Source: Pecten maximus
Taxonomy: Eukaryota
Assembly (NCBI RefSeq): GCF_902652985.1
Contig: NC_047017.1
Location: 5,518,001-5,582,000 of the forward strand
Reading direction: 5' to 3'
DNA: 64,000 bases
Position 1 is the stretch's first letter, and the number at the start of each line of letters is the position of its first letter. Below the pieces are notes generated by a model that was not told the origin of the DNA, searched no databases, and saw only the letters and a program-made list of their open reading frames with translations. The position numbers were made by a program, and so were the translations under genes. Below, one piece after another: positions 56,601 to 58,108 of this stretch.

Positions 56601-57152
56601 TAATTTTTATTGAGATTAGCACAGTTTGATATCATGATGGTTATACTTATAAATTGAGAATCATTACTTTGAAAGATTTGTTAAGCTTTGTATTTGTCGT
56701 AAATATATATTATTTGGTAATTACTATGTACATTTTTTAGGTCGAAATGACCTGTAATATTTCGTCCATATATCGTTATAGGCTAGCTATTGTCTGTATA
56801 CATTGCTGTAGATTTTTCAAATAAAGATAGATGAAGAGGGTAAGGTTGGCACGTTTTCAAGACAATGTAATGTATATCATCTTAACTTTTTTGATATATA
56901 AATCAGGACAATTTAATTTATGTTGTCATTTTCTGGATTTCTATAAAATTTAGGTAACTAATAGCTAAATATTTTACAGCACAACTATACAAAGACAATA
57001 AATGAAACCCCAAAAGCAGAAAAATGCAAAAGTACAAAAAAGGAATACTTTTGGACATATTCATGGAAAGAGCGAGAAGGATAACATGCAGTCTGATACA
57101 GATCACAGGTATTTTCACACAAAACAATCATACAATTGTATATATTTACTGA

Positions 57153-57598
57153 TGTTAAAGTTCAAGGAGCAGTAGTGTGCAGCCAGCCGGAATCGAACCC
57201 GCGACCCTCGGCTTACTGGTCCACCGCTCTACCGACTGAGCTAAAGGGAAATTCCCCCTAGCCAGAAGCTAGAAGTCGACCATACAACTATGTACAGTAT
57301 TTACAATTAAAACCCGGCCTGCTACACTACTTCCTCCTTCAAACGTGTTCGCCTCGAACACACCAACCCAGGTTCTCTCTCCAAGGAAGCCTCTTGCTTT
57401 CACTTGGAGTGGTCTGCGGCACCAAGATAAAGTTCAAGGAGTATTAGTGTGCAGCCAGCCGGGATCGAACCCGCGACCCTCGGCTTACAGGTCCGTCGCT
57501 CTACCGACTGATCTAAAGGGAAATTCCCCCTAGTCAGAAGCTAGAAGGCGACCATAAAACTATGTACAGTATTTACAATTAAAACCTGGCTTGCTACA
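57153..57598 (-). mobile_element. Complete TRIM-like miniature LTR retrotransposon (446 bp) with tRNA-derived LTRs
   Basis: Two 174-bp direct repeats (57153-57326 and 57425-57598), outer TG...CA ends and a 4-bp TSD CTGA. On the minus strand the PBS TGGTGCCG follows the 5' LTR and the PPT AAGGAGGAAGTAG precedes the 3' LTR. Each LTR has an A-box-like (TAGCTCAGTCGG / TAGATCAGTCGG) and a B-box (GGTTCGAT(T/C)CC) sequence. Confidence 0.88.
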
Positions 57599-57659
57599 CT
57601 GATAACATATCATAATTTTCTGATGGGTATAAAGGACAATGTCTAAGATATAATACATA

Positions 57660-58108
57660 GTATTGGAACTGGAACTGGACTAGATCGATCATCGGCGACC
57701 AGGTAGCTTAGTTGGTAGAGTGTCCGTCTAGAGTTTGTAGGGCCCAAGCCCATGATTTCTCTGGCCCTGTGACCATGGTGACTGGGCCAGAGAAATCTTA
57801 GCTAGGAGGGCCCCAGGTTCAAACCCTGGTCTTTCTGCTACATTTTCTTCTTCTCCTGTTACATAATGGGTGTACATGTGCTTGCCAACACTTGTTTGAA
57901 GTATTAGGAGTATGCTTAGCAAGGGGATACCTTAAATTGTGGTCTTCAAGTTGAAGTCTTGAAAAAGGAGGAAGGAATGTAGCAAAACTGAACTAAGTTG
58001 ATCAACGGCGACCAGATAGCTCAGTTGATAGGTTGCCTGTCTAGAGTTCAGAGGGTCCCAGGTTCAAACCCTGGTCTGGCTGCTACATTTTCTCTTTCTC
58101 CTGTTATG
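57660..58108 (+). mobile_element. Second, older TRIM-like element of a different family with tRNA-derived LTRs
   Basis: Direct repeats at about 57660-57863 and 57978-58108 (GGCGACCAG.TAGCT.AGTTG...GGTTCAAACCCTGGTCT..CTGCTACATTTTCT..TCTCCTGTTA). The PPT AAAAAGGAGGAAGGAA lies right before TGTAGC. The PBS, TSD and left boundary are degenerate. Confidence 0.7.

What the first reader, a model, noticed from the sequence alone, without database searches (positions are those of the whole stretch)
57153..57598. Miniature LTR retrotransposon whose LTRs are built around a tRNA-type Pol III promoter
Seen: two 174-bp LTRs, a 98-bp non-coding interior, a PBS (TGGTGCCG), a PPT abutting the 3' LTR and a 4-bp TSD (CTGA). 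Each LTR carries a tRNA-like segment with A and B boxes but no paired acceptor stem. Established: TRIMs are non-autonomous LTR elements, TRIMs have been reported in bivalves, and plant Cassandra TRIMs carry a 5S-derived Pol III promoter in their LTRs. The PBS matches the 3' end (CGGCACCA) of tRNAs such as His or Phe over 8 nt. Inference: this is a tRNA analogue of Cassandra, transcribed by Pol III and mobilised by an LTR-retrotransposon integrase. A casual look would call it two tandem SINEs. I cannot tell whether this family is already catalogued.
Basis: partly seen in the sequence, partly recalled or inferred. Interest (0 to 1): 0.8.

Follow-up and report, generated by a model that had tools for sequence, protein, structure and literature searches.

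The report
Known tRNA-like miniature LTR retrotransposon (Helenus)

Summary
Window 57153-57598 is a 446-bp LTR-interior-LTR element whose sense strand is the minus strand. It has two ~174-bp LTRs about 93% alike, TG..CA ends, a tRNA-His-type PBS, a PPT and a 4-bp duplication (CTGA). Each LTR carries a tRNA-like segment with A and B boxes but no acceptor stem.

The family behaves as an integrase-inserted TRIM, not as a SINE:
- At least 46 full-length copies in the genome.
- Perfect 4-bp duplications in 19 of 27 copies.
- Solo LTRs that carry their own 4-bp duplications.
- Tandem LTR-interior arrays inside a single duplication.
- Paired LTRs that share private variants.

The assembly statistics identify the genome as Pecten maximus xPecMax1.1. 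Kojima (2024, PMC10886601) described exactly this family from that assembly as Helenus-3_PeMa (LTR 174, interior 100, total 448, TSD 4, tRNA-His primer). That paper also proposed the Cassandra analogy ("TRIMp3"). The finding is therefore already known.

Pol III transcription remains untested, both here and in the literature. Only assembled RNA contigs were available. Two T4 runs in each LTR complicate the simple Pol III model.

I add a few things. Ty3/Gypsy elements in this genome have a perfect tRNA-His PBS, 4-bp duplications and a CTTTTACA LTR end like Helenus-3. I also found some Helenus/His-primed chimeras, and a second Helenus-type element next door.

The parts
57149..57152 (.). Target-site duplication, left copy (ctga on + strand)
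   Evidence: Identical to 57599-57602. The family-wide TSD length is 4 bp.
57153..57326 (-). 3' LTR (174 bp; TGTAGCAGG...CTTTAACA on the minus strand)
   Evidence: By eye it differs at 6 of 174 positions from the published Helenus-3_PeMa LTR consensus.
57186..57243 (-). tRNA-like segment of the 3' LTR. A box TAGCTCAGTCGGTAGAGC at 57226-57243; B box GGTTCGATTCC at 57189-57199.
   Evidence: Rfam RF00005, 24.4 bits (below the gathering score of 29), model positions 8-63 only; no tRNA gene called.
57327..57340 (-). Polypurine tract GAAGGAGGAAGTAG abutting the 3' LTR
   Evidence: The family form TTGAAGGAGGGAGTAG is present in 28 of 33 interiors.
57327..57424 (-). Non-coding interior (98 nt)
   Evidence: By eye it shows 3 differences from the published 100-nt Helenus-3_PeMa interior.
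57410..57424 (-). Primer-binding site TGGTGCCGCAGACCA (tRNA-His type), preceded by spacer T at 57425
   Evidence: TGGTGCCGCAGACCAC starts 24 of 33 family interiors. Kojima's Fig. S2 places this family under tRNA-His. A family variant carries the perfect His PBS (L033).
57425..57598 (-). 5' LTR (173 bp plus spacer). Its inner end has decayed to CTTTATC.
57458..57515 (-). tRNA-like segment of the 5' LTR. The A box has mutated to TAGATCAG...; the B box is GGTTCGATCCC.
   Evidence: Rfam RF00005, 20.7 bits, model positions 8-63.
57599..57602 (.). Target-site duplication, right copy (ctga)

Best explanation
The element is an old, inactive copy of Helenus-3_PeMa. [quoted passage not shown]

Shown:
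- It is a non-coding LTR-PBS-interior-PPT-LTR unit.
- It was inserted by an LTR-retrotransposon integrase (TG..CA ends, 4-bp duplication).
- The two LTRs of a new copy are made from a single template, as in LTR-type reverse transcription.
- After insertion, copies decay, collapse to solo LTRs or expand into LTR-interior arrays.

Inferred:
- Reverse transcription is primed by tRNA-His.
- The enzymes come in trans from a Ty3/Gypsy element that uses the same primer. Candidates exist in this genome.
- The tRNA-like segment acts as an internal Pol III promoter. Transcription would start near LTR position ~80 and end at a T run in the 3' LTR, as Kojima proposes for 'TRIMp3' by analogy with Cassandra. 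I put this last step at roughly even odds.

This particular copy lies 44 bp inside an intron, antisense to the host gene. Its LTRs are about 7% diverged.
For: Identity of the genome and family:
- The genome is 918,306,378 bp in 3,983 contigs. Contig lengths 60,076,705 and 44,824,366 equal the published P. maximus maximum scaffold and N50.
- Kojima's Table S1 lists Helenus-3_PeMa from xPecMax1.1 with LTR 174, interior 100, total 448, TSD 4.
- By eye, the published consensus differs from the window's 3' LTR at 6 of 174 positions and from the interior at 3 of 100.

LTR-type mobility:
- 46 full-length hits at 91-94% identity, from 884 first-look candidates.
- Every copy has the same LTR-interior-LTR layout.
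- 19 of 27 copies have a perfect 4-bp duplication and 6 more have one mismatch; chance expectation is about 1 in 256 per copy.
- 60 of 60 LTRs start TG and 58 of 60 end CA.
- An LTR's partner is its nearest relative in 14 of 54 tests, against about 1 expected.
- Solo LTRs carry their own 4-bp duplications (L056, L063, L067, L070, L072).
- The LTR marker has 535 hits against 127 for the interior marker.
- A 5-LTR/4-interior array lies inside one ctat duplication.

Promoter motif: across four different TRIM families in hand, conservation is concentrated on the A and B boxes, as in Kojima's Fig. 2.

Candidate partners: Ty3/Gypsy elements L052 and L053 have PBS TGGTGCCGTGACCAGGAT, LTRs TGTAGAAG...CTTTTACA, 4-bp duplications and PR-RT-RNaseH-IN.
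Against: - No direct evidence of Pol III transcription. Only assembled contigs were available; they show family pieces in RNA libraries but no starts, ends or strand.
- Each LTR has T4 runs at positions ~13-17 (60 of 60 LTRs) and ~167-170 (54 of 60). A Pol III transcript from the 5' LTR would have to read through two of these before stopping at the third to yield an RNA with a terminal repeat.
- The terminal CTTTTACA is shared with Gypsy LTR ends. It may therefore be an integrase site rather than a terminator.
- No sequence similarity to the candidate Gypsy partners exists beyond the termini, PBS and PPT, so the partner assignment is circumstantial.
- The comparison with the published consensus was made by eye, not computed.
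Confidence: 0.9

Rival explanations
1. It is the same Helenus-3 TRIM, but its template RNA is made by Pol II (from the ~80 nt upstream of the tRNA-like segment) or by read-through from host genes. On this view the tRNA-like segment is a relic of an ancient SINE insertion into an LTR, or it serves another role such as TFIIIC binding or RNA structure and packaging.
For: - T4 runs sit at LTR positions ~13 and ~167 in nearly all copies, so a Pol III transcript would be prone to stop about 90 nt after its start, before the PBS.
- Family pieces in RNA-library contigs often run on into unrelated sequence (share 0.14-0.32), as expected for co-transcription within host RNAs.
- Many individual copies have mutated boxes: the exact A box is present in 38 of 60 LTRs.
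- Kojima states that the promoter is not experimentally validated.
Against: - Across distinct families the A and B boxes are the best-conserved part of otherwise dissimilar LTRs. This argues for selection on the boxes in master copies.
- T4 is only a weak Pol III terminator in many eukaryotes (general knowledge).
- Cassandra shows that the analogous 5S arrangement is transcribed from the internal promoter (as cited).
Confidence: 0.08
2. Two tRNA-derived SINEs that inserted side by side, or one SINE that duplicated in tandem, with LINE-mediated mobility.
For: Each repeat contains a tRNA-like head with A and B boxes. SINEs are abundant in this genome.
Against: - About 77 nt precede the tRNA-like segment inside the repeat, and there is no A-rich or simple-repeat tail.
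- The whole LTR-interior-LTR unit recurs at many loci with the same ends and a fixed 4-bp duplication.
- The PBS and PPT lie exactly at the LTR borders.
- Solo LTRs have their own 4-bp duplications.
Confidence: 0.01
3. A short local tandem duplication or satellite unit (period 272) with no mobility of its own.
For: Arrays with a ~274-bp period exist, for example at C19:27797484-27798744.
Against: The dispersed copies lie on at least 16 of the 19 chromosome-scale contigs, each with its own 4-bp duplication. The arrays themselves are bounded by a single duplication, so they are secondary.
Confidence: 0.01

Closest known systems
Helenus-3_PeMa (Kojima 2024, Biology 13:119, PMC10886601; Data S1 and Table S1)
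   Same: Same species and same assembly (xPecMax1.1). Same dimensions (LTR 174, interior 100, total 448, TSD 4). Same tRNA-His-type PBS, PPT and tRNA-like segment. By eye the window copy is about 97% identical to the published consensus.
   Different: Nothing of substance. The window copy is simply a mutated member, with 7% LTR-LTR divergence, a decayed inner end of the 5' LTR and an A-box mutation in the 5' LTR.
Other bivalve Helenus families (51 families in Pteriomorphia, e.g. Helenus-4_ArIr, Helenus-4/5_PeMa)
   Same: TRIM architecture, tRNA-like LTR segment, 4-bp TSD, and a His-type PBS followed by GACCACTCCAAGTG in several families.
   Different: LTR sequences outside the tRNA-like part are not alignable, and the interior lengths differ.
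Cassandra (plant TRIM with a 5S rRNA-derived LTR segment; Kalendar et al. 2008)
   Same: A TRIM whose LTRs embed a small-RNA gene fragment with an internal Pol III promoter. It forms tandem arrays and solo LTRs.
   Different: The promoter is 5S-derived, not tRNA-derived. Cassandra is found in plants and makes 5-bp duplications. Its Pol III transcription has experimental support, whereas Helenus has none.
biv-TRIM (Satovic et al. 2019, PMC6934838)
   Same: A TRIM in bivalves, with solo repeats and TDRx_I(x-1) tandem arrays.
   Different: biv-TRIM has no identifiable canonical PBS, and no tRNA-like LTR segment is reported. It is a different lineage.
tRNA-derived SINEs (SINE2)
   Same: A tRNA-like head with A and B boxes. 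Kojima proposes that a SINE2 insertion into an LTR is the origin of Helenus.
   Different: SINEs are single units with the head at the 5' end, a tail, and variable LINE-type duplications. None of these applies here.

Membership tests
[quoted passage not shown] | Two direct LTRs flanking a short non-coding interior; whole element within the TRIM size range | tested here: met
   173/174-bp LTRs and a 98-nt interior, 446 bp in total. The same layout is seen in 29 other loci.
[quoted passage not shown] | tRNA-like sequence with box A (TRGCY..YGG) and box B (GGTTC) inside each LTR | tested here: met
   Rfam tRNA local hits of 24.4 and 20.7 bits over model positions 8-63. The boxes are conserved across families.
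[quoted passage not shown] | PBS next to the 5' LTR and PPT next to the 3' LTR | tested here: met
   TGGTGCCGCAGACC lies one base after the 5' LTR, and GAAGGAGGAAGTAG abuts the 3' LTR.
[quoted passage not shown] | 4-bp target-site duplication (animal Helenus) | tested here: met
   ctga/ctga in the window. 19 of 27 family copies are perfect and 6 have one mismatch. Solo LTRs also carry 4-bp duplications.
Helenus-3_PeMa specifically | Sequence identity to the published LTR and interior consensus | tested here: met
   Compared by eye with Data S1 as printed: 6 of 174 LTR differences and 3 of 100 interior differences.
TRIMp3 (TRIMs transcribed by Pol III) | Transcription initiates from the internal small-RNA promoter | not testable with these tools
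   Only assembled contigs were available, and they show no starts or strand. The T4 runs in the LTR raise a mechanistic question.
Cassandra | 5S rRNA-derived segment in the LTR | tested here: not met
   The segment matches tRNA, not 5S, in the Rfam scan.
tRNA-derived SINE (SINE2) | tRNA head at the 5' end, a 3' tail, and variable-length LINE-type duplications | tested here: not met
   77 nt precede the head, there is no tail, and the duplication is a fixed 4 bp at TG..CA ends.

The most novel reading that the evidence does not exclude
The autonomous partner of a bivalve Helenus may be identifiable in this genome as a His-primed Ty3/Gypsy lineage. That lineage shares the CTTTTACA LTR end, the spacer-plus-TGG junction, the PPT type and the 4-bp duplication with Helenus-3. 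It includes copies whose LTRs are 99.5-100% alike.

Recurrent chimeras may be footprints of template switching at the shared PBS inside common particles. In them, a Helenus LTR runs straight into a His PBS plus a Gypsy-type leader. This junction occurs at three loci (L021, C8:22637515, C16:31017484), with an analogous structure in L054. No partner has been pinned down for any animal Helenus.
Probability: 0.3. Interest if true: 0.3.

Novelty: already known. Interest (0 to 1): 0.12.

Why it matters
It matters little as a discovery. The class (Helenus/TRIMp3), its presence in scallops and this exact family were published in 2024 from the same assembly.

It has some practical value. Elements of this kind can be mistaken for SINE pairs or tRNA pseudogenes, which may inflate SINE counts and deflate LTR counts in bivalve repeat tables; this is speculation. 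The window also shows two such elements side by side in an intron.

The open questions remain real but modest: is the tRNA-like segment truly a working Pol III promoter despite the T4 runs, and which Gypsy lineage supplies the enzymes?

Tried and rejected
1. RNA evidence for a Pol III start. All 24 runs offered were assembled contigs. Laying four of them showed family fragments and LTR/interior junctions in RNA-type libraries, but no starts, ends or strand. It is not informative for the promoter question.
2. Similarity between Helenus-3 and the candidate Gypsy elements. Sensitive blastn found nothing beyond a 26-nt stretch at the PPT/LTR junction.
3. The element that hosts a Helenus-2-like TRIM in L054. 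Its 330-aa ORF has no Pfam hit and no similarity to the group A gag, so it gives no link to a coding partner.
4. The L021 chimera. Upstream of the Helenus-3 copy lies a Gypsy pol fragment (~70% identical to L052 4197-5293). Downstream lies a His PBS plus leader, with no long ORF in 10 kb. The structure is a rearrangement that I could not resolve.
6. Earlier notes of this scan: none near this place.
The comparison was made by eye.

Full report
**What is in the sequence.**
Searches confirm a 173-nt direct repeat at 57156-57328 and 57428-57600, 93% identical and 272 bp apart. Read on the minus strand, the anatomy is that of a miniature LTR retrotransposon:
- a 5' LTR starting TGTAGC (57598 down to 57426);
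- one spacer T;
- a primer-binding site TGGTGCCGCAGACCA (57424-57410);
- a 98-nt interior with no coding capacity;
- a polypurine tract GAAGGAGGAAGTAG (57340-57327);
- a 3' LTR (57326-57153) ending in CA.

The four bases ctga flank both ends. Each LTR holds a tRNA-like stretch on the same (minus) strand. Rfam's tRNA model aligns to it locally at 24.4 and 20.7 bits. Both scores are below the gathering score of 29 and cover only model positions 8-63, that is, the D arm, anticodon arm and T arm without the acceptor stem. ARAGORN calls no tRNA.

**Is it a mobile LTR element or two SINEs?**
A search of the window's own genome found 884 first-look candidates. Of the 40 that were scored, these yielded 46 full-length matches at 91-94% identity on at least 16 of the 19 chromosome-scale contigs. 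In all 30 fetched loci the parts lie in the same order with the same borders.

The evidence for LTR-type insertion is as follows:
- Of 27 independent copies, 19 have a perfect 4-bp duplication and 6 more differ at one base. One copy has 5 bp. Chance would give about 1 in 256 per copy.
- All 60 LTRs begin TG and 58 end CA.
- The PBS TGGTGCCGCAGACCAC opens 24 of 33 interiors, and the PPT closes 28 of 33.
- Within two-LTR elements, the partner LTR is the nearest relative among 59 candidates in 14 of 54 tests (about 1 expected). Thirty minority states are shared by both LTRs of a single element. This is the signature of both LTRs being copied from one template at insertion.
- A CpG-free 26-mer from the LTR occurs 535 times, against 127 for a 26-mer from the interior, allowing up to 2 mismatches. 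The ratio is 4.2.
- Among ten single LTRs examined, five have perfect 4-bp duplications of their own. These are solo LTRs left by LTR-LTR recombination.
- Tandem arrays occur. One has five LTRs and four interiors and still lies inside a single ctat duplication.

None of this fits SINEs. SINEs would have the tRNA head at the 5' end, a tail, and variable duplications.

**Which genome, and is the family known?**
The genome has 918,306,378 bases in 3,983 contigs. Its contig lengths of 60,076,705 and 44,824,366 equal the published total, scaffold count, longest scaffold and N50 of the Pecten maximus assembly.

Kojima (2024, PMC10886601) defined Helenus as TRIMs with a tRNA-derived sequence in the LTRs, explicitly as the twin of Cassandra. 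That paper reports 4-bp duplications for animal members and 51 families in pteriomorph bivalves, including P. maximus. Its Table S1 lists Helenus-3_PeMa from xPecMax1.1 with LTR 174, interior 100, total 448 and TSD 4. The consensus printed from Data S1 matches the window element: by eye I count 6 differences in the 174-nt 3' LTR and 3 in the interior. Fig. S2 of that paper places this family's PBS under tRNA-His. The finding is thus a copy of an already catalogued family, and the Cassandra analogy is already in print as "TRIMp3". The earlier biv-TRIM of Satovic et al. is a different lineage without a canonical PBS.

**How it most likely works.**
Shown: integrase-type insertion and LTR-type replication, as set out above.

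Inferred:
- *Priming by tRNA-His.* The common PBS matches the tRNA-His complement over TGGTGCCG and again over GACCA. A family variant (L033) carries the perfect TGGTGCCGTGACCAGGAT directly after a Helenus-3 LTR.
- *Enzymes supplied in trans.* A pattern search for an LTR end plus the perfect His PBS found 18 sites. Among them are Ty3/Gypsy elements (L052, L053; a second group is L051). They have LTRs of 762-773 bp that are 99.5-100% alike, a gag, a pol with protease, RT, RNase H and integrase in Gypsy order, and 4-bp duplications in the L052/L053 group (the L051 flanks do not match). Their LTRs start TGTAGAAG or TGTAAAAG and end CTTTTACA, against TGTAGCAG...CTTTTACA in Helenus-3. Beyond these termini, the PBS and the PPT there is no similarity, so the partnership is circumstantial. 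It does agree with Kojima's inference that animal Helenus depends on Gypsy.
- *Pol III transcription.* In its favour, when LTRs of four different TRIM families from this genome are aligned, conservation is concentrated on the A and B boxes. Against a simple version, T4 runs lie at LTR positions ~13-17 (60 of 60 LTRs) and ~167-170 (54 of 60). A transcript starting at the tRNA-like segment of the 5' LTR would need to read through two T4 runs and stop at the third to carry a terminal repeat. The last run is also part of the terminal motif shared with Gypsy LTRs, so it may be an integrase site rather than a terminator.

The RNA data could not settle the Pol III question. All runs offered were assembled contigs. 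They contain family fragments, often continuing into unrelated sequence, and give no starts, ends or strand. I put the Pol III step at about even odds. Kojima likewise states that it is not validated.

**This copy.**
Its LTRs differ by about 7%. The A box of the 5' LTR and the inner LTR end are mutated, so it is an old, dead insertion. I give no date, since I have no calibrated substitution rate. Two RNA-library contigs match the flank up to 57109 and then leave the window at CAG|GTATTT. The element therefore lies 44 bp inside an intron of a gene on the + strand, in antisense orientation.

**Extras.**
- About 60 bp to the right (57659-58107, + strand) lies a second, older TRIM. Its ~129-bp LTRs resemble Helenus-2_PeMa, and its 3' LTR reaches 30.6 bits on the tRNA model.
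- In L021 a Helenus-3 LTR-interior-LTR is followed directly by C+TGGTGCCGTGAACC and a Gypsy-type leader. The same junction recurs at two more loci.
- In L054 a Helenus-2-like TRIM lies between a larger element's 5' LTR/PBS and its PBS/leader.
- These structures could be footprints of template switching at a shared PBS, but I could not resolve them, and further fetching was blocked.

**Verdict.**
The novelty is none: this is the exact family, from the same assembly, published in 2024.

Noticed in passing
window 57659-58107 (+): A second, older Helenus-type TRIM lies about 60 bp from the first, in the opposite orientation. Its ~129-bp LTRs resemble the published Helenus-2_PeMa, and its PPT is GAAAAAGGAGGAAGGAA. 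The 3' LTR (57979-58107) scores 30.6 bits on Rfam tRNA, above the gathering score. The genome search gave 1,259 first-look candidates at 78-82% identity.
   Followed up: partly
window 57754-57797: A 44-nt perfect-ish palindrome (22-nt arms, 91% complementary) is inserted in the tRNA-like part of the second TRIM's 5' LTR. Other copies and RNA-library contigs skip it (joints 57712/57735/57742 to 57805-57840).
   Followed up: partly
window 56917-57109 (+): This is probably an exon of an expressed gene. Two contigs from RNA-type libraries match up to 57109 and then leave the window at CAG|GTATTT, a splice-donor context. The Helenus-3 copy therefore lies 44 bp into the intron, antisense.
   Followed up: partly
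L052:746-9511, L053:707-9469, L051:717-8868: These are Ty3/Gypsy elements with a perfect tRNA-His PBS, LTRs 99.5-100% alike and long open gag and pol frames; L052 and L053 also have 4-bp duplications. The L052/L053 group carries an extra 198-aa ORF with C2H2 zinc-finger hits downstream of pol. Described only; none is singled out.
   Followed up: partly
L021:1360-2010 (-); also G000 C8:22637515 and C16:31017484: A Helenus-3 LTR-interior-LTR is followed directly by C+TGGTGCCGTGAACC and a Gypsy-type leader, and is preceded by a Gypsy pol fragment, with no target duplication. The same LTR/PBS junction occurs at three loci. It may be a recombinant formed at the shared PBS.
   Followed up: partly
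L054:672-2040: A larger LTR element has a Helenus-2-like TRIM (with a His-type PBS) lying exactly between its 5' LTR+PBS and a second PBS+leader. The first junction joins the PBS to the 3' half of the TRIM interior at a GGAT microhomology.
   Followed up: partly
G000 C10:7732420-7738470; C7:20639029-20647226: Two tandem arrays have a period of about 2.0 kb. In one, each unit contains an LTR end plus the perfect His PBS. In the other, each unit contains a Helenus-3 LTR marker.
   Followed up: no
L009:1976-2428 (-): A diverged relative of the Helenus-3 LTR (69-77% identity), one copy carrying a long G run, lies next to a Helenus-3 copy. It is probably a sister family.
   Followed up: no
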